IMG/VR virus record: IMGVR_UViG_3300034073_005389
Span: 62,001-126,000 of that record
Reading direction: 5' to 3' (one strand)
Length of the DNA: 64,000 bases
Each line of letters starts with the position of its first letter. Positions within the stretch are counted from its first letter, which is position 1. Under the pieces are notes generated by a model. That model ran no database searches and was not told the origin of the DNA. It saw only the letters and a list, made by a program, of their open reading frames with translations. Position numbers and translations under genes: made by a program. Below, piece after piece: positions 257-59,500 of this stretch.

Positions 257-616
257 TTATTTAGATTCACCTAACAACTTAGGCTCTTTGGGACCCTTTA
301 CATCTTCTACATCTAAAGCTTCTTCTAAATCTTCAATAAAGTTAGAAACTAAAGAATCAATTACTTTAGATAACTTTTCAACTCTTACATTTTCTACATC
401 ATAATATTTAGCTACTTTAGAAGCTAGTTCCCATAATCCTTGATAAATATCCCTATTCAAATCATCATAAGAATATTGATGCTCATGTTTCTCTAAACTT
501 TCTGGAGCATGTATTGCAAACATAATAGCATCAGCTAAAGCCGTCATCCCTTGTTCTCTAGCTTCTTCTGCTTGCAATAATAAACGATTGTGGGCTATTT
601 TATTTAATTTTGCCAT
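257..616 (-). CDS. Small helical hypothetical virion protein
   Basis: 119 aa with an AGGA RBS. Carries LNKIA and AEEAREQGMTALADAI, resembling the motifs in the head-interior proteins. Confidence 0.6.
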   Translation of the reverse strand: MAKLNKIAHNRLLLQAEEAREQGMTALADAIMFAIHAPESLEKHEHQYSYDDLNRDIYQGLWELASKVAKYYDVENVRVEKLSKVIDSLVSNFIEDLEEALDVEDVKGPKEPKLLGESK

Positions 617-40340: not shown

Positions 40341-40374
40341 ATTTTATAACCTTTGTAACAGTGAGTCCATCTCT

Positions 40375-40402
40375 AATATAGAGATATATCACATATTGTC
40401 AA
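40375..40402 (-). promoter_or_regulatory. Sigma70-like promoter upstream of the LAGLIDADG-MTase gene
   Basis: TTGACA-N16-TATATT on the minus strand, 35 nt upstream of the ATG. Confidence 0.5.
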
Positions 40403-40967: not shown

Positions 40968-41089
40968 ATTATTATAATATACCAGTACTCAAAACAAAAT
41001 AAATTTAAAATTTTAACAAAATACTGTCTTGGCTCACATAAAATGCTGACAAGGTTCATGTATAAAAATACATGTTGTACAGGTAAAAT

Positions 41090-41120
41090 AAAAAGAGCTG
41101 CGATTGCTCGCAGCTCTTTT
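41090..41120 (-). terminator. Terminator after the major capsid gene
   Basis: AAAAGAGCTGCGA-ttgc-TCGCAGCTCTTTT; GCAA tetraloop on the minus strand. Confidence 0.85.
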
Positions 41121-41145
41121 ACAAGCTTTTTAAGCTGTTTTAGTA

Positions 41146-43349: not shown

Positions 43350-43508
43350 TCGAGATCTCCGAGTTGTAAAAGAATTGTTTGCCAGCATTCGCCAGCTGAC
43401 ATGCAAAAATGCATGTTCTTATATCTAATAATTTAATATTACTTATATTAATTTCTATTATAAAAATGCATATTACGATATATGCTTGACAGCATCTTTG
43501 AGGAAATA

Positions 43509-44678: not shown

Positions 44679-44699
44679 AGTACGTAATGCTAGATACTA

Positions 44700-45383
44700 T
44701 CAGGGTCCAACGGGTGGGTTGAAATAGAAGGTAACGAAGGTAAATTGACGTGGTGAAGCGCCTAAGCCTGAGGGGCTGTTTAGAGCGCTGACGAGGTAGC
44801 TAGGAGTATTGACTAATGAGCCATTGGTCTCGAAGTCAATTAAAGTAGCTACTACTGGAGCGCCACCTACTGCAGCAGGTGAGCCTACTGGAGTTAATTG
44901 TCCTGTTGAGGTATAGGTAAGGGGAGCGCCAGCTGATAGACCTACGTTGGTGGGTTGTAGACCGGTAGCAACAGCGGTATCAACTGCATCAAGTGATACA
45001 GCGTATACGCCGGGTTGGTGCCAGCAGGTTACTTTGCCTGAACCTGTAGCGGTGTTTGGTCCTAATACAACGCCTGAGGTAACTTTACCAACTGTACCAC
45101 CTACTACTGAACCGAAGAGGGTGCCGTAACCAGCAATACCTTCGTCAGCTAACATAAGAGGACGTGAAGTTGAAAGAAGATCAAAAGTTACAACTGTGCG
45201 CTTAGCAGTGCCTGATGGATTGACGTAACCGTCAAATACGTCAGCTGCAGCTAAATCAGGTGAGCTTAGGTTTAATGAAACAAAAGTTACTACTTCGCCA
45301 CCGAGGTAGCTGTTGATTTGTGTATCGTAACCGTCGAATTGACCGAGTGGGTTACCAGCTTGATTTACTAGTTTAAGAGCCAT
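44700..45383 (-). CDS. Putative capsid decoration/cement protein
   Basis: Upstream of the MCP gene with similar codon bias; TATGSGKVTCW motif; 2 DGY motifs. Confidence 0.55.
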   Translation of the reverse strand: MALKLVNQAGNPLGQFDGYDTQINSYLGGEVVTFVSLNLSSPDLAAADVFDGYVNPSGTAKRTVVTFDLLSTSRPLMLADEGIAGYGTLFGSVVGGTVGKVTSGVVLGPNTATGSGKVTCWHQPGVYAVSLDAVDTAVATGLQPTNVGLSAGAPLTYTSTGQLTPVGSPAAVGGAPVVATLIDFETNGSLVNTPSYLVSALNSPSGLGASPRQFTFVTFYFNPPVGP

Positions 45384-45489
45384 TGTGATTTCCTTTTTTT
45401 ATGCTACTATGAGCATGTCTTACATCTTAACTTACTTTTATACCTAATTAAGGTATAATCTTATAATTTATTATTAGTAGGTTAGTATA

Positions 45490-46716
45490 TTAAATTTCTG
45501 GAAGATCTGAAGATTGAGGGATTGTTGGTTTAACTTCTTGTTTAGGCTGTTCTTGTCTTCTTGACATACGTTCATTTACTTTATTTTTAACTTCTTGACC
45601 TTTTTCTAATAATTTAATAATTCTTTCTACTGAAGCTATATATGGATCCATTAATCTAATAATATTTTCTACTGCGGAATTAAATGGTGCCCAGCCACCT
45701 TCAATTGGCAATAGATCTGTAACTGAAGATCCAAGTCCTTTGTCTTCAAAACTTCTTTTTTCTGTATCAAATATTTCTATTCTTGTTTTGCCGCCAGCTG
45801 AAGTATATGTCTTTTCAAGAGATTTTTTAATATCTTTTATATCTAATAATTTTGCAAAAATTTCTTTTGCAGCTTCATCTCTGCCTCTAATATCTTCAAC
45901 ATTTTGATTTTTAGCAGCATCAACAGGATTTGTTTTTATTTGCGCTTGATCAATATTTTCTATTAATTTTTTAAATTTTAAATAAGATTCATCTAGCTCA
46001 ACAACCTTATCTGCTAAATAATTTAATTGTTCTTTAAATTGCAAACTTGGTTTTGCAGCAAAAAAAGATTGAAGCCAGCTTGGATTTGTCAATTTATTAA
46101 GCTCATCCATTAGTGCGCTATAATTTTTTTCATATCCTTCATCAGCAGCTGGTAATTTATTGGCTACATAAGCAGCACCCACTAAAGAAGCCAGTAATCC
46201 TGATATAACTTTTGTTCTTAATTTAAGAGCTTCTTTTTTAAGAGATTTTTTAGATTCTACTTCTTGTGCAACTGATTGTAAACAATTATCTGCTAATTTT
46301 CTTAATTTTTCTTTATTTCTATTATCTAAATCATTAGCTACTCTAACCAAAGATAATAAAAATTGTTTTTCAGCATATTTGCGTTGAGTTAGTAATCCAT
46401 CTGGATTTTTATTTACAATGCGTAAATTAATATTTTGTCTTTCAATGTTGTTTTCAACTAATCCATTTAATCTATCATAAGCAGGAGAAAGTACTACAGG
46501 CTCTTTATGAGCAATTTCCATAATATTATTTTTATATTTCATATCTGGAATTGTTTCTGGTTTTACTCCATACAATGCAGCTATAGCAGAAACATCTAAA
46601 GAATCTGCTCTAGGATTGTTTTCTAATGCTTTGAAACTTTTTTCAGAATCATTTGAAATAAGTTTTCTATCTTGAGCAATTTTAACAAATTCTTCAAAAA
46701 TGTCACTGCGTCTCAT
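45490..46716 (-). CDS. Putative internal head protein
   Basis: Helical; FVKIA and LKKEA motifs; one hydrophobic segment. Confidence 0.45.
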   Translation of the reverse strand: MRRSDIFEEFVKIAQDRKLISNDSEKSFKALENNPRADSLDVSAIAALYGVKPETIPDMKYKNNIMEIAHKEPVVLSPAYDRLNGLVENNIERQNINLRIVNKNPDGLLTQRKYAEKQFLLSLVRVANDLDNRNKEKLRKLADNCLQSVAQEVESKKSLKKEALKLRTKVISGLLASLVGAAYVANKLPAADEGYEKNYSALMDELNKLTNPSWLQSFFAAKPSLQFKEQLNYLADKVVELDESYLKFKKLIENIDQAQIKTNPVDAAKNQNVEDIRGRDEAAKEIFAKLLDIKDIKKSLEKTYTSAGGKTRIEIFDTEKRSFEDKGLGSSVTDLLPIEGGWAPFNSAVENIIRLMDPYIASVERIIKLLEKGQEVKNKVNERMSRRQEQPKQEVKPTIPQSSDLPEI

Positions 46717-46773
46717 AGGTTTTCCATTGTATAATTAAATTGTTACTATAAGTATAGCATAATATACTTATAT

Positions 46774-47862
46774 TCATGCTTCTTTAGCTACATCATCAAT
46801 AAATTGATCTACTATTTCTTTTTTAGAATGATACATGCTTGGTATTAGTAATACATTACTACCTAAATTTCCCTGATTATAATTTAATATATTTTCTGCA
46901 ATAATATTAAATTTAGGAGATCTTCTTATAATAAAGTCTAAATTCTCTAATCCATTATATGTTTCTTTTGCAAATTCTACTAACAAATCTTTTATAGTAG
47001 AATCTGTAACATATATTCCTTTTATAGTCCAACTACTAGTAGAAGTATTGTATATATCTTTATCATAGTTAGGATTTAAAGGAAACTTCTTTTGAGTAGA
47101 AGTACTTGTAGCAGGAGTAGTAGATATATGCCTTTTTAAACTTTTATCTAATTCGTTTGGTTTACCCACTAATTTGCTAACTACACTACCAGCCGTTAGT
47201 AAACCAGCAGTAGTTAAAATAGTTTTAATTAACCAAGTTATTATTTTAATAACAGATCCAATAAATTTTCCTTGTTTAGGAACTAAAGCAGCCGCAGCAG
47301 CTGCTGCTGCCCCTGCCGCCCCTGCCGCCCCTGCCGGACCTGCTACTTTAATTAAACTTGTTTCATTGCGATATTGTATAAAAGCAAGCTTCATCATTCT
47401 AGCATCAAGTAAGGTAAATGATTCTGTTGCTAAAGATGAGGGATCTGATCCTGTCATAGCTTGTGTACTATCTTTTACTGCAGATGTAACTCTACTTTCA
47501 ATAGAATCCATTGAAATTTCTTTATTATCTTTAATATCTCCTATAATAGAAGATGATACTTTGTCTAATGCATTTTTAATATCAACTTTAAATACAGCAG
47601 CCCCAATAGATAAAATCCATTTTAACCATTTAAACCCCATACCATCTAAAATTTTATAGAGTGCGGCAGGTGCTAGCATAGAAATTACGCTAGTAGTTTT
47701 ATTATTAGGATCTATGTTTTGATCTACAAAATCTTTTACATATCCAATTAAAGAAGATAATAAAGCTCCTTGAGCCGATTTTTTAATCGGCTTATCTGTG
47801 ATTAATGATTCTACAATTAATCCATCCATGTAATATTTAATTTGACTGTTTCTTTTTTTCAT
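46774..47862 (-). CDS. Putative internal/ejection protein with hydrophobic segments
   Basis: Start MKKRNSQ at 47862; IKKSA and LIKVA motifs; amphipathic/TM-like helices and an Ala/Gly linker. Confidence 0.45.
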   Translation of the reverse strand: MKKRNSQIKYYMDGLIVESLITDKPIKKSAQGALLSSLIGYVKDFVDQNIDPNNKTTSVISMLAPAALYKILDGMGFKWLKWILSIGAAVFKVDIKNALDKVSSSIIGDIKDNKEISMDSIESRVTSAVKDSTQAMTGSDPSSLATESFTLLDARMMKLAFIQYRNETSLIKVAGPAGAAGAAGAAAAAAAALVPKQGKFIGSVIKIITWLIKTILTTAGLLTAGSVVSKLVGKPNELDKSLKRHISTTPATSTSTQKKFPLNPNYDKDIYNTSTSSWTIKGIYVTDSTIKDLLVEFAKETYNGLENLDFIIRRSPKFNIIAENILNYNQGNLGSNVLLIPSMYHSKKEIVDQFIDDVAKEA

Positions 47863-47863
47863 A

Positions 47864-49606
47864 TTACCTTGCTGGAGGTTTAGATTCTGCTTTCCAATTG
47901 CTAATTGCATTGGTTAATAAACTGTCGTTTGTTCTAGCAAAACTAATTTGACCCTTCATAGCATTATCTGAATCCCTATTAACAGGATCTTCAAAATATG
48001 AATTATATACTTCCATAATTCTATAAATTAAATCAGATAAATGTTTATTTAGTTTTTTCAAGGCGTAAAAGTAATTAAATAAGTTAGATTGAACATTCTT
48101 AATATCTGTCTTAAAATTATCCAAATCCACTCTTAAATTAAAGTTTTTCTTTGCAGGATCTAATAATAGTTTTTCTAAATTATTTATCGATTCTTCAATC
48201 TTAGGATTAGAATAAGCATACTCGTTTGGTAGTAATTTTTCTACTACGTCTAAAAAGTTTGCTATAGCAATTAAATCAATGGTCCCAGGTCTTAATGGTC
48301 TAGCACGAATTAATTCTGTTATACCAGCACCACCAACTCCCATAGCGCCACCAGCACCTCTACCGCCCCTTCCTCCTGCTCCTCCTGCACCACCGGGACC
48401 ACCACCGGCACCACCGGCACCACCACCGGCACCACCGGCACCACCACCGGCACCACCGGCTCCTGCTCCAGCACCACCACCACCGCCAGCACCTACTCCA
48501 ACACCAGTTTGCCCAACTGCACCTGTAGTAGTGCCTGGACCTGTAACAGAACAAGGCTTGTCATCAGCTCCCATAATCTGAGAGCCATATTGTTGAATAG
48601 ATTTTAAATATAAATCTACAATTTTATCATAATCTGGAGCTATTCTCTTATCATACATCGCTGCTTTGTTTTTTAAATAAGAAGCCCTTTTGTACAAAAT
48701 ATGTACTGCTAAGCAAGGATCCGATTTAGGAGCTAACACTGGAGAAGTTACAATCATTTTATCAGGAGTCTTATATTTAATCATCATATCCTTTAACCAA
48801 TTGAAAAAGGCTGATTGATCTGCTAAATCTTTAACAGTTAATTGTACAGGTAAACCAGTAAAAGTAGGCGCTCTCTCTAATCCATTTTCCCAAGTCTCTA
48901 TAGATAATTCTTTAGATGGGAAAGCATCTACCAATGCATCTTGATTTAAAGTAGATTTAGCCGCTTCAGGACCTGCTTTAGATGCAATTGGCTCTCCAGT
49001 TAATTTGCTGTTAATTTCTTCAATAATTGCTTTTAACATGACCTCTAGTACTTTATTACTACGAGCATCATTGTCTCTTAAATATGATAAATATCCTTTT
49101 AATGGATCTTTTAAAGCATATACATCTATTTTATTAATATCCCTACTAACAGGATCTCTGTCTTTTCTATCTCTAGGAAAACTATTAAACTCTAAAGCAC
49201 CAGCATCAATAGCCGCTTGTTTTTCATCGGCTTTCCAAGCAAAACGATTTCCTTGCCAAGTTAATTTGTTCTCTGCTGCCCATTGAATAAAATCACCTAA
49301 TGTTCTAAAATCTTGCACATTGGCAACTGGAGCAGGCTTAGTAGGATCTGTTCCTAATGGAATTCCTTTGAACTCTGGAGGTGCGTTTTTAGGATCAATT
49401 ATTCTTTGTAAATTAACTAATAATGGCTTAGCTGCACGATAAGCATTTAAATCTACAGCCGGTCCTGTAGTAGTGGTTTGAGTAAAAGATGTTACTGCAG
49501 GGGCTGCCGCAGGAGGTTGTGCTAGAGCTGATTTTTTTAATTGATCACCACCAGCTATATTGAATAATTGTTCTAATAAATTTCGATCTCTATATAAAAA
49601 AGACAT
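47864..49606 (-). CDS. Putative internal head protein with poly-Gly/Ala linker
   Basis: LKKSA motif followed by a Pro/Ala stretch; long GGAGG tract. Confidence 0.5.
   Translation of the reverse strand: MSFLYRDRNLLEQLFNIAGGDQLKKSALAQPPAAAPAVTSFTQTTTTGPAVDLNAYRAAKPLLVNLQRIIDPKNAPPEFKGIPLGTDPTKPAPVANVQDFRTLGDFIQWAAENKLTWQGNRFAWKADEKQAAIDAGALEFNSFPRDRKDRDPVSRDINKIDVYALKDPLKGYLSYLRDNDARSNKVLEVMLKAIIEEINSKLTGEPIASKAGPEAAKSTLNQDALVDAFPSKELSIETWENGLERAPTFTGLPVQLTVKDLADQSAFFNWLKDMMIKYKTPDKMIVTSPVLAPKSDPCLAVHILYKRASYLKNKAAMYDKRIAPDYDKIVDLYLKSIQQYGSQIMGADDKPCSVTGPGTTTGAVGQTGVGVGAGGGGGAGAGAGGAGGGAGGAGGGAGGAGGGPGGAGGAGGRGGRGAGGAMGVGGAGITELIRARPLRPGTIDLIAIANFLDVVEKLLPNEYAYSNPKIEESINNLEKLLLDPAKKNFNLRVDLDNFKTDIKNVQSNLFNYFYALKKLNKHLSDLIYRIMEVYNSYFEDPVNRDSDNAMKGQISFARTNDSLLTNAISNWKAESKPPAR
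48330..48510 (-). repeat. GC-rich tandem repeat encoding (G/A)n
   Basis: Alternating ccaccggca / ccaccaccggca units. Confidence 0.85.
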
Positions 49607-49614
49607 ATAAATCC

Positions 49615-50619
49615 TTAAGCATTAGGAGATACTGCATTAACGTGAGCTAAAAAGGCTTGCAATACTACATTTTGTTTTTCTTTGTTTTGAGCATCTTGTA
49701 TTGGATAGCCTAAAAATAACATTAGCTTTTCTAATTCTCCCACACTCTTTAATGCATCAATAGATACTGGAGAAAATAATTTTGGACCAGTAGGAGTGGG
49801 TAATGTTACATTTATGAGAGCTAACGCATGAGGCTTCTTTAATATATCTACTAAATCATCAGGTACTTTTCCTGGATCTACTCCGCCTGGTTTAGCAGTT
49901 AATAAAGGCTTGTCTTGCTTAATATAAGAAGCATATTCAGGAGATTGAATAATTGAATTATAGTAAGCTGAATAAAAACGATCTAATTTTTCTACCAATG
50001 GAGCAATTTTCTTAGCATGCTCAATTTTCTTTTTTTGATCATATTTAGCTATGTCATTAGTCTTAGGAATTTCATTGGCTAATTCTTGTAAATCAGATCT
50101 AGTAAAATTGTCTCTTAATTTAGAACCAAAGTCTTCAGTTACTCTTACTAATGCATCGGCTACTGCCCATACGTTTTTAACTGCATTTTGAGTGCGCCAA
50201 TCCCACATACCATCTTGCATGGCTTCTGAACTGCCTGGTCCAATTCTGCGTAATCCATCAATTACGTTGTCTAACTCAATAATGCCAGTTGGTAACTTTT
50301 GTTCTTTTTTAGTGGCTTTTACGTCAGTGGTCCATTCTTCTCCACGAATAGATGAACCAGCAGAATATTGCTCCGCTAAGAAATCATTAAAGTCTTTTCT
50401 TTTATCAGTTACATCTACGACTTCTTTAAATTTACCAGGAGCTGATGGATCTGGAACTCTTTTGGTATTGTACTTAGCCATGTTGCTAGCAAAATTCTTA
50501 ATGGCTCGCTGCATGTTGACAATATCAGGCTGTGGTGGAGCTACTGGATCTTTATCAGACAAAACATCAGCATATTTTTTAATATAGTCAACTAAATATT
50601 TATTACGATAGTTTATCAT
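49615..50619 (-). CDS. Putative internal head protein
   Basis: IKKYA motif near the N-terminus; DGMWDWRTQNAV resembles a peptidoglycan-binding-domain remnant. Confidence 0.45.
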   Translation of the reverse strand: MINYRNKYLVDYIKKYADVLSDKDPVAPPQPDIVNMQRAIKNFASNMAKYNTKRVPDPSAPGKFKEVVDVTDKRKDFNDFLAEQYSAGSSIRGEEWTTDVKATKKEQKLPTGIIELDNVIDGLRRIGPGSSEAMQDGMWDWRTQNAVKNVWAVADALVRVTEDFGSKLRDNFTRSDLQELANEIPKTNDIAKYDQKKKIEHAKKIAPLVEKLDRFYSAYYNSIIQSPEYASYIKQDKPLLTAKPGGVDPGKVPDDLVDILKKPHALALINVTLPTPTGPKLFSPVSIDALKSVGELEKLMLFLGYPIQDAQNKEKQNVVLQAFLAHVNAVSPNA

Positions 50620-50641
50620 TTTATTTCCTATATTCTATGCC

Positions 50642-52192
50642 TTATTTAGGTGTGCTAGCGCCCGATTTTTTATTTTTTATTTCTTGATTATGTCTTAGAA
50701 CGTTAGCTTTAGATGCTTCAAAATCAGATTGAATACTTGTTATTGTAGCTGCTAAATTAGTGTTAATTTGTTTTGCCTCTTCTATAAGGTCATTAATTTC
50801 ACTTTCAGTAGATTCATCAGTTACTCTAGAAGTTATTTTTAATAATTCAGATTTTGCTTTTGCAATTTCAGAATTAATTTTTGCCATTTGCCCATTAAAA
50901 TATCCTCGCCTCATACTTTGTTTTGCAATAAAATCTTCACCCATAATATTAGGAGATTTATTAAAAGAATCAATCTCATCTTTTAATGCATTCATTCTTG
51001 AAATGTTAGACGTTAAAATATTATTTAATGCATTTTTCTTTTTAATAATTTTTCTTTTTTTAGATTCTTCTATTGCTGCAGGATTGCCTTGGACTGTGTA
51101 GCCATATAATTCTTTATCTGTAGCAACAGAAAAATCATTATTTTCAAGTTTCTCTAATCTTGCATCTTCTGCAGTTTCTTTTCTTTCCTCTTCAGCCTCT
51201 TCTCTTTCCCGTTTTTTTTCATTTCTTAAAGTTTTTCTTTCTTCTCTTTTTAATTGTCTTTCCTTTTGTCTTATTTCAGCCGCTCTATCTGCAGTTAATG
51301 GAACCTTTTTAATTGCAGTATCTGGGACTTCTCCCGTAAGCTCTACTGCCTTAATTGCATTTAATTTTTCTATTGCAGAACTAATAATTGCAACACAAGC
51401 GTCATATTCTGACTTATATTTATCCCAATCTTCAGAACTAAACCCTGAATACAATGACAAAAAACCCAGACTACTTGGTCGAGCCTCTTCTTTAGCATCC
51501 ATAACCTCCTCTTTAAGAGTATATAATGCTTCTACTGTCGGATTTGCCGAATCTACCCCCGAAACTGCTGTTTGAAGCCTTGTATGATCACTAGATCCGG
51601 TCAAGAGTGTTTTCCCTCTATCAGCTATAACGGTAGCTCTTGCTTTTGCATCTTTTGTAAATTTTATAGCCTCATTTTTTAAAGAAGCCACATACTCATT
51701 TAGATTCATCTTTATGATCTCTTCAGCAGCAAATATTCTCTTCACCGCTTGTATCGCCTCCGCCACCGATAACTTGCCAGTAGGCTCCTTGCTTAAAGTC
51801 CTCTTAATCGCTTCCTGACGCTCTGTTACCGTCATCACCTTGTGCTTGCCCTCCACATCCTTAAGCACATGACCACCTTCAGGATGAGCAAAATCAATTA
51901 AATCCTCTCCAGTCTCCTTAGATGTCTCATACAATGTCTGAGCCTTCTTATAATGTACATAATTCTTCTCAATGTCCTCTGCGTGCTTGTGCAATCCCTC
52001 TCTGCGTAATCCCGCACATAATTTAATTATGCTCTCCGATAAATTAACGCCAGGTGTTAAATCACGCCCCATCATTAAATGCTCCGCAGATTTAATAGTA
52101 GGTGATCCCTTAACTAATCCCTTGTCAATTGCGATCTTCTCCAAAGAACGAAGTACTGCTGAATCATCAAATTTGCCATGTTTAAAAGTCAT
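50642..52192 (-). CDS. Putative internal head protein, coiled-coil
   Basis: Start MTFKHG at 52192; LEKIA and FTKDA motifs; charged coiled coils. Confidence 0.45.
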   Translation of the reverse strand: MTFKHGKFDDSAVLRSLEKIAIDKGLVKGSPTIKSAEHLMMGRDLTPGVNLSESIIKLCAGLRREGLHKHAEDIEKNYVHYKKAQTLYETSKETGEDLIDFAHPEGGHVLKDVEGKHKVMTVTERQEAIKRTLSKEPTGKLSVAEAIQAVKRIFAAEEIIKMNLNEYVASLKNEAIKFTKDAKARATVIADRGKTLLTGSSDHTRLQTAVSGVDSANPTVEALYTLKEEVMDAKEEARPSSLGFLSLYSGFSSEDWDKYKSEYDACVAIISSAIEKLNAIKAVELTGEVPDTAIKKVPLTADRAAEIRQKERQLKREERKTLRNEKKREREEAEEERKETAEDARLEKLENNDFSVATDKELYGYTVQGNPAAIEESKKRKIIKKKNALNNILTSNISRMNALKDEIDSFNKSPNIMGEDFIAKQSMRRGYFNGQMAKINSEIAKAKSELLKITSRVTDESTESEINDLIEEAKQINTNLAATITSIQSDFEASKANVLRHNQEIKNKKSGASTPK

Positions 52193-52262
52193 TACACGCC
52201 TCAATAAGTTAAATTATTTCTATAATATACCAAATTATAGAAAGAGTCTATTAAATAAATGT

Positions 52263-53435
52263 TTATGCAGATAATTTATTTTTATATTCTTTTCTTATCC
52301 TACATATTACTTTTCTTCCTATCCCCATCACCCTGCTCAACTCCATAATAGATCTACTATCATTTACTATCATATCCATCTGCTCTTGCGTTAAACTCGC
52401 TTTGTTGTGCGGTATCCTGCCACAACCCTTACCCTTTCTATTCTCACTTATCTTTTTCCTAGTCTCATCCGTCACCAATACCGGCTTCTTCGGTAATACC
52501 TCTAATATCCCATTTCTAAGCAATCTAGATCCATGTACGGTACAATATCTAACATTATTAACAATCTTATATTTTGCTCTTCCAGCTACCATGCAACCAT
52601 CAGCATGACAATAAATTTCTTCTGTTGCATACCTAATTGCAGCCTTCTTTTCCCAAGTAGCCTTAATCCCAGCTGCCATTTTTTCCAATTGCTCTTTAGG
52701 TATTTTTTTTCCTTTATGAGATTCTGACATCTTCTTGCGAACCTCTTCCGTATAAATAGAATCTTTATTCAAAGAAGATCTCCATTTAGAATATCTTTCC
52801 TTCTGCTCATCAGTCCATTTGTGACCCTGCGCCGGATGACCCTTTGTCATAATTTGCTTTTTAGTCGCCTCAGATAACTTTCTTTTTAATTCTTGTCGCT
52901 GCTCGTCAGATAGTGATTTCCAACGATTGCTTAAATTTTTTTTCCAAGCTTCAGATTTAGGAGCGTTATATCCTCCCAATGTAGCATTGTATCCCTTACC
53001 ATTTTGGATATAACTATCATATTTAGTAACAAATTTTGTTTCTAATTCATTGGCAGCATCTGTATTATTGCAAGAATCTATAATATCAAATTTAAAATTA
53101 TTTGCCCCATGTTTTTTTATAGCTAAATGAAATGGTAAGTCAGAATTTTCAGAACTTTTTATATGAGCCTGCCACCTAGCAATAGGATTTACAGATTGAC
53201 CAATATAAATTTTGTTGTTTATTAAACATTTTGCACGATAAATATAAATTGTTCTATCTTCTTTATTAGTATTAGATCTTTTTTCTTCTCTAATTTTTTT
53301 TGCCACATCTTTAGGACTAATTAAAATTACATCCTCTATTGCAGCAACTTCTACTGCGTTAATTTCTAATGAATTAACCTCTGCGTTTTGATTTTCTAAA
53401 TTTTTATTATCAGTTGGTTGAATTTCTTGAGTCAT
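52263..53435 (-). CDS. GIY-YIG homing endonuclease with NUMOD3-like repeats
   Basis: IYIYRAKCLINNKIYIGQS...ARW..H...E...GYN; EEVRKKMSESHKGKK; GGAGG RBS before 53435. Confidence 0.85.
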   Translation of the reverse strand: MTQEIQPTDNKNLENQNAEVNSLEINAVEVAAIEDVILISPKDVAKKIREEKRSNTNKEDRTIYIYRAKCLINNKIYIGQSVNPIARWQAHIKSSENSDLPFHLAIKKHGANNFKFDIIDSCNNTDAANELETKFVTKYDSYIQNGKGYNATLGGYNAPKSEAWKKNLSNRWKSLSDEQRQELKRKLSEATKKQIMTKGHPAQGHKWTDEQKERYSKWRSSLNKDSIYTEEVRKKMSESHKGKKIPKEQLEKMAAGIKATWEKKAAIRYATEEIYCHADGCMVAGRAKYKIVNNVRYCTVHGSRLLRNGILEVLPKKPVLVTDETRKKISENRKGKGCGRIPHNKASLTQEQMDMIVNDSRSIMELSRVMGIGRKVICRIRKEYKNKLSA

Positions 53436-53475
53436 ATGTTCCTCCAACTTCATATATATCATCAAAATCAAAATT

Positions 53476-54165
53476 CTAAAGCCATAAAAATTCTAGAGAT
53501 ACATTGAGCGGAGAAGGTGGGGCGGTAACCATAGCTACAGCTGGGTGGATACTACTAGGTCTTCTAGTGGTTAAGAAGCCATATTCGCTGACGTACAAAT
53601 TAGCTCTAACGGGATATTGTTGATTTGTTTCGTACTGATCGGTTTGGGCGAACATTCTATTAAACCACACGGTCATTCTACCGGATCCTTGGGTACTATC
53701 ATCACCTGGGATATTGGCGACTTGGTAGGTATAGTTAACGATAGTACGGATGGCATTAGGTTTACCTGAGCCGGTGAGGTCGAAGTTAAGAGGAGTACCT
53801 GCGACGAAGGTAATTACGCCATTTACGGGGTTAAGGACAACGTTAACGGTGGAGGTAAAGCTATTGGCTATGATATTAGGTTTACGCAATTCTGCTTTAA
53901 TATCTATGGGTGTGACGAGATATCCATCTGGACCTGGGACACCGACAGCGGGAACAATAACGACTTCGTTCCAGGAGACGTTGGTGAAGGCACGAGTTTT
54001 GATATCATCGATAATACCTAAAGGTGCGGTACCATTGGAGACGGTTGCCATAACTTGATTACCGATGACGGTGAGTTCGGCTATCATGCCAGGTTGAAAT
54101 TCTGCCGAAGGGTCACAAATAAAGCTGGCTGGCAAGGCATTAGAGACTTGTACTAAGCGTAACAT
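53476..54165 (-). CDS. Putative capsid decoration protein, paralog of 44700..45383
   Basis: MLRLVQ start and STQGSGRMTVW motif; 1 DGY motif. Confidence 0.5.
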   Translation of the reverse strand: MLRLVQVSNALPASFICDPSAEFQPGMIAELTVIGNQVMATVSNGTAPLGIIDDIKTRAFTNVSWNEVVIVPAVGVPGPDGYLVTPIDIKAELRKPNIIANSFTSTVNVVLNPVNGVITFVAGTPLNFDLTGSGKPNAIRTIVNYTYQVANIPGDDSTQGSGRMTVWFNRMFAQTDQYETNQQYPVRANLYVSEYGFLTTRRPSSIHPAVAMVTAPPSPLNVSLEFLWL

Positions 54166-54212
54166 TCTAGCTCCAAAAAATAATAGACGACGTTCTTGTT
54201 ATATATAAATTT

Positions 54213-55040
54213 ATGCAGAAAACAAAAAGAAACCACCAAATTGATCAAGAAATAATTTCTTTGTACAATAGTGGTTTAACGACATATGAGGTTGGAGAAA
54301 AAGTAAAATGTTCTCAAACATGTGTTTTAAATTGTTTGAAAGAGAATAACATTTGTAGAAGATCTACTTCTTCATATAATACTAAGTATATAACCAACTT
54401 ATATTTTTTTAATAAAATAGATAATGAGGCGAAGGCATATTTTCTTGGATTATTATATGCAGATGGAAATAATTATGTGAGGAGGAAGCATAGTTATGAG
54501 GTATCTATTAAGTTAAAGGCAGAAGATAAATACATATTAGAAAAGTTAAGAGATTATTTATGTCCTGAGATGAGTTTAAAAGAAGTAGTAGATAAGAGAA
54601 CGGGCAATTTGCATTATTTATTAAAAATAAATAGCAAAGAATTATCTGAGCAATTATTTAAATTAGGGTGTATACCGAATAAAAGTTTGATATTAAAATT
54701 TCCTATGATTGAGGAGGATTTAATATCTCATTTTGTACGTGGATATTTTGATGGGGATGGGAGTTTATATAGTAGAAAGGCTAATAAGAGTGGGCATATA
54801 AATTATATTTGGCAGATTACATCTACTAGATTTTTTTGTGAATATTTAAAAAATTATTTATTGAATAAATATAAAATAAATGGGACTATGAAATTGGCGT
54901 GTAGGAAAAGTAATTTAATAACTACGACATTATCGGTGGGAGGCAATAAGCAGGTAGAAAAGTTATTAGTTTGGATGTATGGTGGGGCGAGTTTGTATTT
55001 AGATAGAAAATATAAAAAGCCTCTGTTAAGAGGCTTTTAA
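54213..55040 (+). CDS. Free-standing LAGLIDADG homing endonuclease
   Basis: HTH, YFLGLLYADGN and FVRGYFDGDGS. Confidence 0.85.
   Translation: MQKTKRNHQIDQEIISLYNSGLTTYEVGEKVKCSQTCVLNCLKENNICRRSTSSYNTKYITNLYFFNKIDNEAKAYFLGLLYADGNNYVRRKHSYEVSIKLKAEDKYILEKLRDYLCPEMSLKEVVDKRTGNLHYLLKINSKELSEQLFKLGCIPNKSLILKFPMIEEDLISHFVRGYFDGDGSLYSRKANKSGHINYIWQITSTRFFCEYLKNYLLNKYKINGTMKLACRKSNLITTTLSVGGNKQVEKLLVWMYGGASLYLDRKYKKPLLRGF
55014..55038. terminator. Bidirectional terminator
   Basis: AAAAGCCTCT-gtta-AGAGGCTTTT. Confidence 0.7.
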
Positions 55041-55067
55041 AGTAAAGTAAGTTAAGATAAGTTAAGA

Positions 55068-55445
55068 TCAAGGTTCTTCTTCGAAGACTTCTTGGAAGAC
55101 ATCTTCGACTAAAATATCATCTGCCATATTTATGTCTGGCATATTAAATACGGTTCCATGATTTTTTAAATTTTTAACCATTTTATCAGAAGTTAATTTT
55201 TTAGTATGACTATCTGATACTTTGGTGGGATTTTTAGGTTTACGGTGTTTGGTGGCAATTTTGTGTAAAATATGTAGTAATTGATCTGCATGAGCGGTGA
55301 AGCCACTGGTTTCTAGCACATCGATAGCAGAGTTAACATAATCTACAGCTTGAGTAATGTCAGATAAATCTTGATTACTGGCTTTTTTAACTAATTGTTG
55401 ATGCATGAGTTCAACAATTTCATTTTCTAATTTTGGTTTTAGCAT
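55068..55445 (-). CDS. Small putative prohead core/internal protein
   Basis: LVKKA and LHKIA; helical module AIDVLETSGFTAHADQL. Confidence 0.5.
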   Translation of the reverse strand: MLKPKLENEIVELMHQQLVKKASNQDLSDITQAVDYVNSAIDVLETSGFTAHADQLLHILHKIATKHRKPKNPTKVSDSHTKKLTSDKMVKNLKNHGTVFNMPDINMADDILVEDVFQEVFEEEP

Positions 55446-55465
55446 ATTACCTTTATTTTTAATAA

Positions 55466-55693
55466 TTAAAACTTTTTTAATTTAGAAGCAAAGCTAGTTA
55501 TTACTTGAGTAATTTCATTTGCTTCTTGGTTCATTCCGGCTTTGTCAAAAATATCGGCAGCTTTATGCAAATAATCAATTGTTCTGGCAAATTTATTAAA
55601 AGCATATTTATTTTCTAGTTGGTTATTAACTAGTTGTTTTTCCATTGTGCGATAAAGTTCGTTGGAAATATCTTTTTCATCATCGTAAAACAT
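55466..55693 (-). CDS. Small putative prohead core/internal protein
   Basis: FNKFA; AADIFDKAGMNQEANEI; paralogous to the 125-aa neighbour. Confidence 0.5.
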   Translation of the reverse strand: MFYDDEKDISNELYRTMEKQLVNNQLENKYAFNKFARTIDYLHKAADIFDKAGMNQEANEITQVITSFASKLKKF

Positions 55694-55732
55694 AAAACCT
55701 CAGTATTATGTAATAATAAACATAGAAAAAAC

Positions 55733-55770
55733 AAAAGTGCTATAAGAAATATTTCTTATAGCACTTTTTT
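55733..55770. terminator. 36-bp perfect palindrome / terminator
   Basis: AAAAGTGCTATAAGAAAT|ATTTCTTATAGCACTTTT. Confidence 0.7.
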
Positions 55771-55871
55771 TATACTACATCATTTTTTAAATTGAGCTTT
55801 AAAATCGACTGCAGTAATTTTATTGTCTCCGCCTACATTTCTTTCATGCATTTGTTTAAAATCTTTAGACG

Positions 55872-56534
55872 TTAGACTTTTTTTTTACCGTTTGAGCTAC
55901 CTGAGCCATTTGATTTGCCTTTCATAGCAGGCTTACCCTTCATGGCTGGTTTTTTCTTAGATTTTTCTTCTTCTTCTTTTTCTTCTTGTTTTTTAGCTTT
56001 TTTAGCTTCAACAATTAAGGATGCTAATTTTAAGCTAACGCTAGAGCTATTTTCCATTCCAACTGCATCTAAAGCTGCTGAAGCGGTTAATAAGCTGTCA
56101 ATGGCTACATCAAAAGCGGCGGTAGCTGATAAATCTTCTACCATATCTGTGTCTAATTCATCAAGATCAAGATCAAGATCAAGATCATCTGACATTCCAT
56201 AATCATCTGACATAGCATCATCGCTTGACATGCCGTCGTATGACATAAGATCATCATATACTAATCCAGTGTCTTGCATACCCATATCTTCAGTATGCAT
56301 CTTGTCTTTGGAATGCATCTTGTCTTTGGCATACATTTTATCACCACATTGACAGCTATCCATCATGGCTGAATCCATGACTTTATTGCAATCTGGGCAT
56401 TTTTGTTTGCCTTTAGCTTGATTCATATCTTGAGCATATTTATAGTGACCATTAAATAATGATTTGTGTTCTTTGCTGTTTAACACTGCATCCATTGTTG
56501 CAGCAACAAAATCTGATACGCTTTTATTATTCAT
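55872..56534 (-). CDS. Putative core protein with acidic Met/Asp tract and basic tail
   Basis: YKYA motif, CPDC...CQC, DKM repeats, (DL)n and a KPAMKG repeat. Confidence 0.55.
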   Translation of the reverse strand: MNNKSVSDFVAATMDAVLNSKEHKSLFNGHYKYAQDMNQAKGKQKCPDCNKVMDSAMMDSCQCGDKMYAKDKMHSKDKMHTEDMGMQDTGLVYDDLMSYDGMSSDDAMSDDYGMSDDLDLDLDLDELDTDMVEDLSATAAFDVAIDSLLTASAALDAVGMENSSSVSLKLASLIVEAKKAKKQEEKEEEEKSKKKPAMKGKPAMKGKSNGSGSSNGKKKV

Positions 56535-56553
56535 AATATCCCTCTATGTAAGA

Positions 56554-59500
56554 TCAGAACATTCTCTTTGAAGTCTTAGCGAATGCTGCAGACAATTGTG
56601 ACCAATCATCAGATTGTGCGGTGTTGACTTCACCTGAACCAATCATACCTACTTGTGGCATACGTCCAGCTTCTTTTTGTAGAGTTGGTGCATGTTTAGC
56701 TACTACTCTCTTTAATGACTGGAATGACTCATCATTAAACTTCATGATTTCGTCTACTTGAGCTGAGACAGCATAGCTATCATTGACGCAAAGACCACGA
56801 TCTACCATTTCATGAGCTAATTCATAGGCTCTAGCTAATTTAACACGATAACCATTTAATTCATCTTCTACTTGAGCTTTGACGTGTTCTTTTACTAATT
56901 CGCTAGCAAATTCTGAACCACCGTCTACTTGACCGTAGTATTGCTTGTAGTACTTAACTGCGGCAGGATCTAAGCCTTCTGCTACTAAAGCGGGGAAGTC
57001 AGCAGTATCAAGCTTGCCTTCGCTAACTAAACGAGCAATTGCTTCTGCTTCTTTGCGAACTTTAACTGGAGCAGTAGCAACGTCCATCATCTTACGGCTT
57101 CTTTGTTCGACTGTTTCTACTAGACCTAATTCATCGCTAGGCTTGACATCAAGTTTAGTTTGACCATTGGTAAGTCTGTGTGCTTGATCTAACATATCGC
57201 TAAATTCTGCTTTTGACATATCGTGTAATTCTCCATCATCCATCTTACCAAGGGCGTCTGCAGCAAGTTTGGCGCGAAGAGCAGAGCGACCACTCTTGGT
57301 GTCAAATGCAGTGGCTTTCTTAACTGCAACTGTTTTGCCAGGATTTGCACTCATTGCATCATTTACCTTTGATGCATCATCTACATAAACCATATCGCTA
57401 TCCATATCGTTAGTATCACCGTCATCATCGTATGACATGAGGTCATCGGCGCTGCTTTCATCTGACGTGAATAAATTTTCATTTAAGCCAGAACCCAATG
57501 GCATATTTAATAAGTCTGCAAGATCTGATTCGGAACCTTGAGCAGATTTCTTTAGAGCTGCTTTTCTACGTTGTGCTGTCTTTTTCAATGAAGCCTCCAT
57601 TTGTGCACGTTTGACAAGAGCCTTGGTGCCACGAGCATATTTAACAAAGGCTGTCATTAATTTTAAACCATCAGCGATAGCTGTTTTAGCTTCTGCAAAA
57701 GCATCTGAAGCTAATGTATTTACTAATTCTTTATTAGCTCTGTTTACGCTACCATTTTTGTGAATAGTAGATAGCATGCCTAATTCTTGATAGTGATCAT
57801 TTAATTCTGCAATTGATTCTTTCATAGCGCGAGTTAATGCGCCATTTAATTCTTTGCGAAGTGTGTTGAGAGTAGATACGCTAAAGCTAGATGCTGCTGT
57901 AGCTAATTCTCCACCAGCTTCTGCACCGGCTTCAGGAACTTCTGCGCCAGCTTCAGGGGCTTCTTTGCCTAATTCTTCAATGGCTCCCATTTCAGCTTTT
58001 TCACCAGTAAGGGCTCTTACTGCCTCTACTAGATCTGAGCTAAGGTCTCTTACCTTTTCAGATAGTCTAAGAGCTGTTTCTTTAGGATCACCTTTCATAC
58101 CCTCATCTTCTACATCCTCTTCGCCAGCAGCTGGTGCGGCAGGAGCAGCTGCGCCCATATCAGCAGGTGGTGCAGCAGGAGCAGCAGCAGCAGGAGGAGC
58201 GGCTGGGGCAGGAGGAGCAGGAAGAGCAGGAGGAGCAGCTTGAGCTTGTCTTACTAGTGTGCGAACTCCATCAGGACCATATGATTTTACTTTATCAAGT
58301 AATCTGGCTCCAAAGTCTTTTGTAGCAATAGAATCATACATCATATTAGTATTGCCACCAGATAATTCACGAACTGATGCTGTAAGTAATAGTTTATCTC
58401 CAAGAAGAACTTGCCAACCGCTGTTTTCAAAATTAGTAGTACCGTCTAAGTTAGCTGCTTTTACAAATCTTGCTTTTAGACCTGCGCGAGCTAACATCTG
58501 CTTGCGCTTTAGTTCATTTGCCTCATCAGAAGAAGCAGGTGAAGGGTGTAAACTATTTACATCACCAACGCCAGGAAATGGCTTCTGTCCTACCATTTGC
58601 TTGTCTTCTGAACGAGCATCCATATTTAATGAATCAACTGGATATTTAACTTTTCCAGGGGTGGGTTCATTTACACCACCGCCACCTTGATAATAAGCTC
58701 TTTTATCTTCTAATGCTTGTTTTGCCATGTTGACAATAGCAGTACGACGCATAGCGCGCTCTTCAGCTTCTGCACGAGCTAACATCTTTTTACGCTGTAA
58801 CTCATCAGACTCATCAGATGAAGCAGGTGATGGATGTAATCCTGTTACGTCGCCAACTCCAGGGAATGGTGATTGACCTACCATTTGCTTGTCACCATTC
58901 ATTCTCATATCCTCATTTAAAGGATCTTTTGTATACTTGGCTTGACCTGGGGTAGGCTCATTAACGCCACCGCCACCTTGAAAATAACCTCTTTTATCAA
59001 AATTTGATCCAGACATATGTTGTTCCTCTTGTATGTTTGATGTATTTGCTAACTTATTCAATTTGTTTTTCATTAATTGTAACTTCGTTTCAATAGCAGC
59101 GGTAACTTCACGAAGTTCATTAATAGAATTTAAATCTGTAATGTCTTCTAAATTATTAGAAGCATATCTTGCATTTTGCGGGATACCCGGAGGCATCATG
59201 TTGTTAGAATCTTGAGTATCTGTTTTTAATGCTCCATTATTAGCATTTTCTTTCATTTGTTTTACTTGAGATAAAATATTCTGTATTTCTTGCTCAAAAC
59301 CATCTAAAGTATTTGACTCACATGTGAAATTAGCTGTATCACCAGGCTGATCTCCTTGAGTGGAAATACTAGCATGGAATACATCGGCAAATTTATTTAA
59401 CTCATTAGATTTATTTTCTACATAAGTATTTAATGTGTTAGCTGCTGCAATAATATGCTTTATATGAGCTTTTGGATCTGCCCCATTAACTACAATTGAT

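What the first reader, a model, noticed from the sequence alone, without database searches (positions are those of the whole stretch)
45490..56534. Shared helical module (A-x-x-L-D/E-x-x-G-x4-A-D/N-x-I/L) in otherwise unrelated head proteins
Seen: AIDVLETSGFTAHADQL (125 aa), AADIFDKAGMNQEANEI (75 aa), ASAALDAVGMENSSSV (220 aa), CAGLRREGLHKHAEDI (520 aa), VANDLDNRNKEKLRKLAD (408 aa), and AEEAREQGMTALADAI in the 119-aa gene at 257-616. Each lies near a KxA motif. Inference: a portable prohead-targeting or core-assembly hairpin, analogous to the T4 capsid targeting sequence, that is removed on maturation.
Basis: partly seen in the sequence, partly recalled or inferred. Interest (0 to 1): 0.6.

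Follow-up and report, generated by a model that had tools for sequence, protein, structure and literature searches.

The report
Helical hairpins in phage head proteins
Only two, perhaps three, neighbouring small genes of this giant phage truly share the helical hairpin, as duplicated copies of one head-assembly domain; the other look-alikes are no better than chance, and the signal really shared by the head proteins is a short L-x-K-x-A motif that is probably the head protease's cutting site.

Summary
The window is part of a 361-kb jumbo-phage genome. The flagged region is the block between the prohead protease (56554-61302) and the split major capsid gene.

All six quoted strings exist, and each is conserved in its own orthologue family across 40-60 non-redundant relatives. 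They are not one module.
- The 75-aa and 125-aa proteins are tandem paralogues (hhalign 99.3%, E 3e-20). They share a ~70-residue N-terminal three-helix domain whose helices 2-3 form the hairpin.
- The 220-aa hairpin is a possible distant copy; its scores are sub-significant.
- The 520-aa, 408-aa and 119-aa segments score no better than control families, reversed controls or shuffled decoys.
- The 520 and 408 proteins are paralogues of each other through a different domain.
- The 119-aa gene lies in the tail block.

A six-segment profile finds nothing new, and a jackknife re-finds only the 75-aa protein.

The "KxA" remark hides the stronger signal. L-x-K-x-A is the most enriched non-low-complexity gapped tripeptide in the portal-to-capsid module (27 observed, 8 expected; rest of genome 46 vs 37). 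The enrichment recurs in three relatives. It is probably the prohead-protease site; this is inferred, not shown.

Removal of the hairpin on maturation is untested. Interest is modest.

The parts
55466..55693 (-). 75-aa protein: the minimal form of the N-terminal three-helix domain (helix 1 plus hairpin). The hairpin region is residues 30-72, at 55478-55606.
   Evidence: ORF; re-translated. Paralogue of the 125-aa protein. 78 orthologues in 80 loci. Family of 555 cluster representatives.
55068..55445 (-). 125-aa protein. It has the same N-terminal domain (hairpin residues 25-67, at 55245-55373), then a conserved C-terminal H-T-K-G-L-T...H-G-T-V-F-N-M segment and an acidic tail.
   Evidence: AF2 model: H3-23, H30-46, turn 47-49, H50-66, H86-95.
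55872..56534 (-). 220-aa protein. It has a conserved N-terminal 35 aa ending in Y-K-x-A-S, an acidic linker, a highly conserved hairpin-like segment (residues 137-178, at 56001-56126), and a Lys-rich tail. It is a possible distant copy of the 75/125 hairpin.
   Evidence: hhalign E 0.002-0.012 in the module register. Leave-one-out scores are slightly above control families.
50642..52204 (-). 520-aa protein. The conserved N-terminal ~160 aa are paralogous to the 408-aa protein. Its hairpin (residues 55-94, at 51923-52042) is a 28-residue insert relative to the 408 family. The C-terminal two thirds are poorly conserved.
   Evidence: AF2 model of the N-domain.
45490..46716 (-). 408-aa protein, paralogue of the 520-aa protein over residues 4-113. 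It is conserved in the family but has a longer turn and no similarity to the 75/125 module. A hydrophobic helix follows.
257..616 (-). 119-aa protein in the tail gene block. Its conserved L-Q-A-E-E-A-K-E-Q-G-M-x-K-L-A segment is residues 11-34 (515-586). It is not part of the head module.
   Evidence: Tail sheath at 13411-16188.
56554..61302 (-). Prohead protease fused to a long C-terminal, probably scaffold-like, extension. In this genome it is interrupted by an intein (about residues 103-481). It holds 8 L-x-K-x-A motifs.
   Evidence: phrog_18299 head maturation protease, E 5.6e-13. Hint, Intein_splicing and LAGLIDADG_3 domains. Relatives are 1166-1210 aa without the insert. Motif list.
52085..52099 (-). 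Candidate protease site T-I-K-S-A (residues 36-40 of the 520-aa protein; family consensus [LI]-x-K-x-A-S).
   Evidence: K 100% and A 98% conserved in 54 non-redundant homologues with variable surroundings. Lies in a linker predicted disordered, pLDDT below 50.
47773..47787 (-). Candidate protease site I-K-K-S-A (residues 42-46 of the 378-aa protein).
   Evidence: K 100% and A 92% conserved in 41 homologues. The motif [LIVFM]KK[STY]A is found only in the head module.
49526..49540 (-). Candidate protease site L-K-K-S-A (residues 23-27 of the 580-aa protein).
   Evidence: It did not reach the 60% conservation threshold used for this family's alignment.
50569..50583 (-). Candidate protease site I-K-K-Y-A (residues 13-17 of the 334-aa protein).
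   Evidence: I 89%, K 87% and A 87% conserved in 49 homologues.
56433..56447 (-). Candidate protease site H-Y-K-Y-A (residues 30-34 of the 220-aa protein; family consensus Y-K-x-A-S-D).
   Evidence: K 100% and A 100% conserved in 56 homologues.
53476..54165 (-). 229-aa protein with no hairpin, the most conserved gene of the block. It served as the anchor for fetching related loci.
   Evidence: 70-96% identity across 80 loci. No PHROG, Pfam or PDB sequence match.
41146..43406 (-). Major capsid protein gene in two pieces (43062-43406 and 41146-41865) around a LAGLIDADG endonuclease ORF (41972-42910). It marks the downstream end of the head block.
   Evidence: Capsid-family HMM hits at 1.9e-54 and 5.6e-167. 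Relatives carry PF25209 Phage_capsid_4, weak. Sub-threshold group I intron match at 41937-42069.

Best explanation
The six segments are not one portable module. Three different things are present.

(1) A real domain. This is a ~70-residue N-terminal three-helix unit (helix 1 plus a Gly-turn helical hairpin). The tandem paralogues of 75 and 125 aa share it by duplication. The hairpin of the adjacent 220-aa protein may be a distant copy. All three genes sit directly after the prohead-protease gene, in a widespread clade of uncultivated phages known from contigs of up to about 490 kb.

(2) Family-specific hairpins. The 520-aa and 408-aa proteins are paralogues of each other through a different N-terminal domain. 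The 119-aa protein is encoded in the tail block. The likeness of their hairpins to (1) is confined to about 13 residues. That stretch has the generic signature of a helix end, a Gly turn, a hydrophobic residue and the start of the next helix. In the 520 and 408 proteins it also overlaps an L-x-K-x-A motif.

(3) A short linear motif. L-x-K-x-A, often h-K-K-[STY]-A, is what the head-module proteins really have in common.

Most likely mechanism (inferred):
- The 220, 75 and 125 proteins are small scaffold-like or prohead-core proteins.
- Their hairpin is the folded core and pairing surface, for example a 75/125 heterodimer.
- The N-terminal domain carries variable C-terminal tails into the prohead.
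- The protease then trims these and the larger internal proteins (520, 334, 580, 378, 408) at L-x-K-x-A sites. This parallels L/I-x-E in T4 and A-x-E in SPN3US/phiKZ, but with Lys.

Shown here: the paralogies, the conservation, the predicted hairpin fold, the modular architecture, and the motif enrichment and its conservation.

Inferred: virion location, pairing, cleavage and function.
For: Paralogy and conservation:
- 75 vs 125: phmmer E 7e-6; hhalign 99.3%, E 3e-20.
- 520 vs 408: hhalign 95.4%, E 2e-8, with the 520 hairpin as a 28-residue gap in 408.
- The gene order is conserved in 58 loci. Synteny runs from protease to capsid in contigs of 441-491 kb.

Fold:
- Predicted hairpins, with pLDDT 76-87 in the hairpin blocks.

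Failure of the six-way module:
-.

Modularity of the 75/125 domain:
- 555 cluster representatives at E <= 1e-3. The domain starts at residue 10 or earlier in 146 of 149.
- 86 of 149 carry tails of 40 aa or more, falling into 39 BLAST clusters.

Pairing of 75 with 125(1-72), weak support only:
- ipSAE 0.41 against a best control of 0.01.
- That mark was reached by 58 of 80 solved complexes and 2 of 110 mismatched pairs. At 0.60 or under it was reached by only 7 of the 80 and by both mismatches that passed.
- The runs agree in at least 96% of contacts, and the partner's pLDDT is at least 63.

The motif:
- In an unbiased scan of 2,933 gapped tripeptides, L.K.A is the best non-low-complexity pattern for the portal-to-capsid module: 27 vs 46 elsewhere, P 1.7e-8, in 14 proteins.
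- Against composition it is 27 observed vs 8.0 expected, with a shuffle maximum of 19 in 2000. The rest of the genome has 46 vs 37.
- It is replicated in relatives: 16 vs 3.0, 12 vs 2.6 and 8 vs 3.0.
- All 8 copies of [LIVFM]KK[STY]A in the genome lie in this module.
- Isolated h-x-K-x-A sites with K and A 87-100% conserved sit at residues 13-46 of the 220, 520, 378 and 334 families.
- The 520 site lies in a linker predicted to be disordered.

Protease:
- Identified by phrog_18299, E 5.6e-13.

Known analogue:
- SPN3US gp245 cuts after A-X-E and removes N-terminal propeptides of 20-254 residues by multiple cuts (PMC10052503).
Against: - No proteomic or expression data exist for this phage or its relatives. 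No isolate matched, so virion location and cleavage rest on gene position and motif statistics alone.
- The 220-75 link is sub-significant and could be convergence.
- The L.K.A pattern was noticed before the unbiased scan was run. Lys/Ala-rich helices may favour it for structural reasons; several conserved copies lie inside predicted helices.
- The complex prediction is only a weak pass.
- The AF2 models have modest overall confidence (mean pLDDT 66-67).
- The collinear arrangement in 75 and 520 (N-terminal helix, K-x-A, hairpin) leaves room for a very old common origin that these tools cannot resolve: hhalign E 0.0025-0.01 with relaxed settings.
Confidence: 0.55

Rival explanations
1. One portable hairpin module, of common origin or function, is present in all six proteins. 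It targets them to the prohead or core and is cut away on maturation.
For: - All six segments are conserved in their families.
- Two of them are modelled as hairpins.
- In the 520 family the hairpin is a discrete insert relative to the paralogous 408 family. The 408 family has its own hairpin-like segment at a different place.
- Conserved h-x-K-x-A motifs lie before and after the hairpins of the 520, 408 and 125 families.
- 75 and 520 are collinear at hhalign E 0.01.
Against: - Cross-family profile scores equal those of control families and decoys.
- The jackknife fails for five of the six.
- Reversed controls reach the same hhalign E-values.
- The 408 segment has a turn three residues longer and gets no hit.
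- The 119-aa gene is in the tail block.
- No further genome protein carries the module.
Confidence: 0.12
2. The hairpins belong to propeptide or scaffold regions delimited by L-x-K-x-A sites. They act only during assembly and are then degraded. The proteins differ in origin, but the hairpin shape recurs because scaffold-type regions are built from such units.
For: - The 520 family has four conserved K-x-A sites within its first 90 residues, bracketing and entering the hairpin.
- The 408 family has sites at columns 12, 114 and 157 around its hairpin.
- 42 of 62 members of the 125 family have h-x-K-x-A at the end of helix 3.
- In SPN3US, long propeptides are removed by multiple cuts.
Against: - Several of these K-x-A copies lie inside predicted helices, where a protease would not easily reach them.
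- The 75-aa protein would be destroyed entirely.
- There are no cleavage data.
Confidence: 0.2
3. Apart from the 75/125 duplication, nothing is functionally shared. The resemblance is the generic signature of amphipathic helix, Gly turn and helix. L-x-K-x-A is a by-product of Lys/Ala-rich helices, not a protease site.
For: - A PDB profile search with the 125-aa family alignment returns only weak hits, among them designed helical repeats and bundles, at E 0.2-4.
- The fold searches are uninformative.
- K.A overall is only mildly enriched.
Against: - L.K.A is 3.4-fold over composition only in the head module, not in the rest of the helix-rich proteome.
- The enrichment persists in relatives at 30-50% identity.
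- The best sites are isolated conserved residues in otherwise variable, disordered N-terminal linkers.
- All eight h-K-K-[STY]-A copies are in the head module.
Confidence: 0.13

Closest known systems
T4 capsid targeting sequence (CTS) of the internal proteins, with gp21 processing at L/I-x-E (own knowledge; cited within PMC10052503)
   Same: - An N-terminal element on proteins encoded around the prohead protease.
- Variable cargo follows it.
- A short protease motif is shared by many prohead proteins. Here the 75/125 domain is N-terminal with 39 kinds of tails, and L-x-K-x-A is shared by 14 module proteins.
   Different: - The CTS is about 10 unstructured residues at the extreme N-terminus.
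- There is no sequence similarity.
- The candidate site has Lys where T4 has Glu.
- Neither targeting nor cleavage is shown.
P22 scaffolding protein (gp8) C-terminal helix-loop-helix coat-binding domain (own knowledge)
   Same: - A small helix-turn-helix with a Gly-containing turn, in a protein of the protease/scaffold/capsid gene block.
- In the 220-aa protein the hairpin lies near the C-terminus and is followed by a basic tail.
   Different: - In the 75, 125 and 520 proteins the hairpin is N-terminal.
- No sequence or detectable fold match was found.
- Binding to the capsid protein was not tested.
Propeptides and A-X-E processing of head and ejection proteins in giant phages SPN3US, phiKZ and 201phi2-1 (PMC10052503)
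   Same: - A large phage with many head-module proteins carrying N-proximal conserved short motifs.
- Paralogue families of internal proteins.
- Propeptides may be cut at several sites.
   Different: - A different clade: no PHROG or Pfam hits and no tblastn hits to isolates.
- The motif is L-x-K-x-A rather than A-x-E.
- There is no mass-spectrometry evidence here.
T4 gp67/gp68, small prohead core proteins next to the protease gene (own knowledge)
   Same: Two small helical proteins (75 and 125 aa, against about 80 and 141 aa in T4) encoded beside the prohead protease. They are candidates for the core.
   Different: - No detectable homology.
- The gene order differs: here they come after the protease.
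- The role is inferred from position only.

Membership tests
   - Jackknife: only the 75-aa protein is re-found. The others rank 23-55 of about 250, and the 408 segment gets no hit.
- Family-profile cross scores for 520 and 408 equal those of the control families.
- hhalign E-values overlap the reversed controls.
   No additional protein of the 493-ORF genome scores above the shuffled or reversed decoys.
75/125 N-terminal three-helix domain family (unnamed) | Significant sequence similarity over the whole domain. | tested here: met
   - 75 vs 125: hhalign 99.3%, E 3e-20; phmmer E 7e-6.
- 555 cluster representatives in the large library.
75/125 N-terminal three-helix domain family (unnamed) | Membership of the 220-aa hairpin. 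| tested here: inconclusive
   - hhalign E 0.002-0.012 in the correct register.
- In HMM searches the 75-aa protein is the 220 profile's best non-self hit, and the 220-aa protein ranks among the top hits of the 75+125 profile, but all at decoy-level scores.
- The genes are adjacent in 58+ loci.
T4-type capsid targeting sequence | A short peptide at the extreme N-terminus, immediately followed by a prohead-protease site. | tested here: not met
   - The hairpins lie at residues 30-66 (125 aa), 30-72 (75 aa), 137-178 (220 aa), 55-94 (520 aa) and 120-147 (408 aa).
- They are folded helical elements, not a terminal peptide.
T4-type capsid targeting sequence | Sufficient to carry a foreign protein into the prohead. 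| not testable with these tools
   This needs a cultivable phage-host pair and reporter fusions.
Scaffold-type coat-binding helix-loop-helix (P22 gp8-like) | A helix-turn-helix fold. | tested here: met
   AF2 models of the 125-aa protein and of the 520-aa N-domain, with modest confidence.
Scaffold-type coat-binding helix-loop-helix (P22 gp8-like) | Binds the major capsid protein. | not tested
The capsid gene of this window is split.
Substrates of a prohead maturation protease | A short consensus motif shared by, and specific to, head-module proteins. | tested here: met
   - L.K.A: 27 observed vs 8.0 expected in the module, 46 vs 37 elsewhere.
- Replicated in three relatives.
- h-K-K-[STY]-A: 8 of 8 copies in the module.
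- The sites are conserved.
Substrates of a prohead maturation protease | Demonstrated cleavage at the motif. | not testable with these tools
   This needs mass spectrometry of particles, or recombinant protease with substrates.

The most novel reading that the evidence does not exclude
The ~70-residue N-terminal three-helix domain of the 75/125 superfamily is a folded capsid-targeting and assembly tag. In this clade of large uncultivated phages (contigs up to about 490 kb) it delivers dozens of unrelated cargo tails into the prohead. A prohead protease with an unusual Lys-containing site (L-x-K-x-A) then releases or trims them. On this reading the hairpins of the 220, 520 and 408 proteins would be ancient, diverged copies of the same tag.
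Probability: 0.15. Interest if true: 0.6.

Novelty: new member of a known kind. Interest (0 to 1): 0.3.

Why it matters
As stated, the finding would have meant a transferable packaging tag for a whole class of giant phages. That is not borne out.

Three useful things remain:
- a gene-by-gene map of the head-morphogenesis block of an uncultivated clade of very large phages that has no annotated relatives;
- an unnamed N-terminal domain family with a modular architecture;
- a concrete, testable prediction of the prohead-protease recognition motif, L-x-K-x-A, a Lys-containing counterpart of the Glu-based sites known from T4 and the phiKZ-like phages.

If confirmed by mass spectrometry, the motif would let the mature ends of head and internal proteins be predicted across hundreds of metagenomic genomes.

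Tried and rejected
Searches that gave nothing useful:
- PHROG and Pfam scans of the ten proteins: nothing above noise.
- megablast and tblastn against isolated phages with the region, the 520-aa protein and the 229-aa protein: no match.
- PDB profile searches with the 125, 520N and 229 families: only weak generic helical hits, or none.
- Atlas look-alikes of the 125-aa protein: only unnamed viral clusters.
- Foldseek with both models: only orthologues or noise.
- Paper search for the genome size: no hit.
- Rfam at gathering threshold over 40000-56600: no hit.

Ideas tested and rejected:
- An idea of my own: the N-terminal helices of 75/125 (S-F-E-D-E-I-x-R-S-M-E-K) and of 520/408 (K-F-E-D-S-x-x-M-R-S-L-E-K) might be the true shared targeting peptide. 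The cross-family profiles score at decoy level, so this is rejected as unsupported.
- 'Each lies near KxA' as evidence in itself: rejected. K.A is expected about every 70-100 residues in these proteins.

False positive:
- P0072, a 5641-aa protein with '11 stretches' in the big search, is a repeat-driven false positive from a Thr/Gly/Ala/Asp-rich repeat protein.

Technical slips:
- Searches failed (a time-out, and a file of mine overwritten by a family file). They were repeated correctly.
- One search used wrong coordinates and was repeated.

Not used: read laying, the look-up of sequencing runs, alternative genetic codes.

Full report
**Setting**

The window is bases 62001-126000 of a single 361,490-bp virus record with 33% G+C. 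Nearly all genes are on the minus strand.

The landmarks, in order of transcription, are:
- terminase and portal, just beyond the window;
- four large paralogues;
- a tyrosine-phosphatase-like gene;
- a 1582-aa protein at 56554-61302.

The 1582-aa protein carries a head-maturation-protease domain (phrog_18299, E 5.6e-13). That domain is interrupted by an intein (Hint, Intein_splicing and LAGLIDADG_3).

After it come ORFs of 220, 75, 125, 229, 520, 334, 580, 378, 408 and 227 aa, with free-standing homing endonucleases between them. The capsid gene follows. Here it is in two pieces, at 43062-43406 and 41146-41865.

None of the ten proteins in question matches a PHROG or Pfam family. No isolated phage carries a relative.

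**Relatives**

- The 125-aa protein has homologues on metagenomic contigs of 441-491 kb. Their neighbourhoods are collinear from the protease to a 337-351-aa capsid protein.
- Using the very conserved 229-aa protein as anchor, 80 further loci were fetched from IMG/VR.
- From these I collected 40-62 non-redundant members of each gene family.
- The order protease > 220 > 75 > 125 > 229 > 520 is seen in 58 loci.

**The observation**

*Fit to the pattern*
- The pattern as written fits only the 75-aa protein.
- A relaxed core fits four of the six, plus one unrelated protein.

*Conservation and fold*
- Each segment is conserved within its own family.
- In the 220-aa family it is the best conserved part of the protein.
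- AlphaFold models give a helix-turn-helix for the 125-aa protein: H30-46, a turn at S-G-F, then H50-66, preceded by H3-23.
- They give the same for the 520-aa N-domain, where the hairpin has the highest confidence in the model.
- So the segments are real hairpins.

*Cross-family similarity*
- 75 and 125 are clear paralogues.
- 520 and 408 are paralogues of each other, but through another domain. It runs from S-L-E-K-I-A-x-E-K-G-L to A-H-P to K-x-P-T-G-K-L.
- In that alignment the 520 hairpin is a 28-residue insert.
- For 220 against 75/125, hhalign chooses the module in the right register, but E is only 0.002-0.012. Leave-one-family-out HMM scores are only slightly above three control families.
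- For 520 and 408, cross scores equal those of the controls. hhalign E-values overlap those of reversed alignments.
- A jackknife re-finds only the 75-aa protein.

It is not met for the 75/125 (perhaps also 220) core.

*The 119-aa gene*
- Its segment is conserved in four relatives.
- It lies in the tail block, about 13 kb downstream of the sheath gene, not among the head genes.

**The 75/125 domain**

- A profile search of 1.84 billion representatives gives 555 clusters at E <= 1e-3.
- In 146 of 149 top representatives the domain begins within the first ten residues. Protein lengths run from 56 to 382 aa.
- 86 carry tails of at least 40 aa, which fall into 39 unrelated BLAST clusters.
- One giant hit is a repeat artefact.
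- The domain is thus a constant N-terminal unit with highly variable C-terminal additions. This is the one respect in which 'portable' is apt.
- A complex prediction of the 75-aa protein with residues 1-72 of the 125-aa protein gave weak support only:
  - score 0.41 against a best control of 0.01;
  - the mark was reached by 58 of 80 solved complexes and 2 of 110 mismatches, but at 0.60 or under by only 7 of the 80 and by both passing mismatches;
  - the runs agree in at least 96% of contacts, and the partner's pLDDT is at least 63.

**The KxA remark**

K.A as such is unremarkable: 54 observed against 39.7 expected. Several results nevertheless point to a specific motif.
- Family alignments show isolated, 87-100% conserved [LIY]-x-K-x-A-[SQ] sites. 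They lie in otherwise variable N-terminal stretches (residues 13-46) of the 220, 520, 378 and 334 families. Further ones occur in 408, the protease and the capsid protein.
- In this genome [LIVFM]KK[STY]A occurs eight times, always in the portal-to-capsid block.
- An unbiased scan of 2,933 gapped tripeptides was then run. It ranks L.K.A first among non-low-complexity patterns enriched in that block: 27 vs 46 elsewhere, in 14 proteins, P 1.7e-8.
- Against each protein's own composition it is 27 vs 8.0, with a maximum of 19 in 2000 shuffles. The rest of the genome shows 46 vs 37.
- The excess recurs in three relatives.
- The 520 site lies in a linker predicted to be disordered.

By analogy with L/I-x-E in T4 and A-X-E in SPN3US (PMC10052503), I take L-x-K-x-A to be the recognition site of the prohead protease. 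This is inference, because no cleavage data exist.

**Removal on maturation**

- Conserved h-x-K-x-A motifs lie before the hairpins (520, and the window's 125).
- They also lie at their ends: 125 in 42 of 62 members, Y-K-Q-A-Q in 520, and column 157 in 408.
- And they lie inside them: 220, 520 and 75.
- The hairpins could therefore be part of regions that are degraded, or they could stay in the mature proteins. The data do not decide.

**Verdict**

- The finding is partly real. There is one true paralogous hairpin domain, in two and perhaps three adjacent genes, plus unrelated or unresolvably distant look-alikes.
- The kind of thing is known: small helical scaffold or core proteins, and a protease motif shared by head proteins. 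The family and the Lys-containing motif are undescribed.
- Interest is modest.

Noticed in passing
window 56554-61302 (-), about residues 103-481: The prohead protease gene carries an intein with a LAGLIDADG endonuclease domain (Hint, Intein_splicing, LAGLIDADG_3). Relatives of 1166-1210 aa lack it.
   Followed up: partly
window 41146-43406 (-): The major capsid gene is in two ORFs (43062-43406 and 41146-41865) around a LAGLIDADG_2 endonuclease ORF (41972-42910). There is a sub-threshold group I intron match (RF00028, 25.6 bits, E 4.9e-4) at 41937-42069. It is probably an intron-interrupted capsid gene. Splicing was not checked.
   Followed up: partly
window 53476-54165 (-): The 229-aa protein between the small helical proteins and the 520-aa gene is by far the most conserved gene of the block (77-96% identity in 80 loci). 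It has no PHROG, Pfam or PDB sequence match. The 227-aa protein next to the capsid gene (44700-45383) is likewise well conserved among relatives and unassigned. Both are candidates for shell-associated proteins.
   Followed up: partly
window 50642-52204 and 45490-46716 (-): The 520-aa and 408-aa proteins are paralogues over an N-terminal domain of about 110 residues (hhalign 95%, E 2e-8). The rest of each protein is poorly conserved. The 408 and 378 proteins contain hydrophobic, membrane-like helices, and the 580 and 378 proteins contain Gly/Ala-rich tracts. The set looks like internal or ejection proteins.
   Followed up: partly
L001 (genome 127711-140914; window coordinates 65711-78914, partly beyond the window): Four large ORFs (729, 871, 1241 and 1530 aa) lie between portal and protease. 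At least three share an N-terminal h-x-K-x-A-Q motif followed by S-D-x-F-R-E-W-like residues. The 729 and 871 proteins share a C-terminal F-M-K-K-Y-A, and the 1241 protein ends with L-K-K-I-A-S. They appear to be an expanded paralogue family of head-module proteins.
   Followed up: no
window 62747-63520 (-): A tyrosine/dual-specificity-phosphatase-like gene (Y_phosphatase2/3) sits just upstream of the protease. It is conserved at that position in the related contigs.
   Followed up: no
window 54213-55040 (+), 52263-53471 (-), 61310-61909 (-): Free-standing homing endonuclease genes (LAGLIDADG_3, GIY-YIG with NUMOD3, and an HNH/endonuclease VII type) are scattered through the head block of this genome. 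They are absent from most relatives.
   Followed up: no
related loci, e.g. L085 8255-8701, L069 9192-9599, L026 8747-9382: Some 75- and 125-family members carry a tail with the motif G-G-x-A-D...P-x-D-F-D...K-V-E-M-E-H-T...A-M-D-H-L. It is one of the two commonest of the 39 tail types.
   Followed up: no
L002 (genome 153337-154050; outside the window): A 237-aa protein beyond the terminase gene contains a hairpin look-alike (K-L-A-N-L-A-A-V-F-D-A-S-G-D-L-E-L-K-K-Q-A-S-V-L-D-E-L) that includes an L-K-K-Q-A-S motif. It scores at noise level with the module profiles.
   Followed up: no
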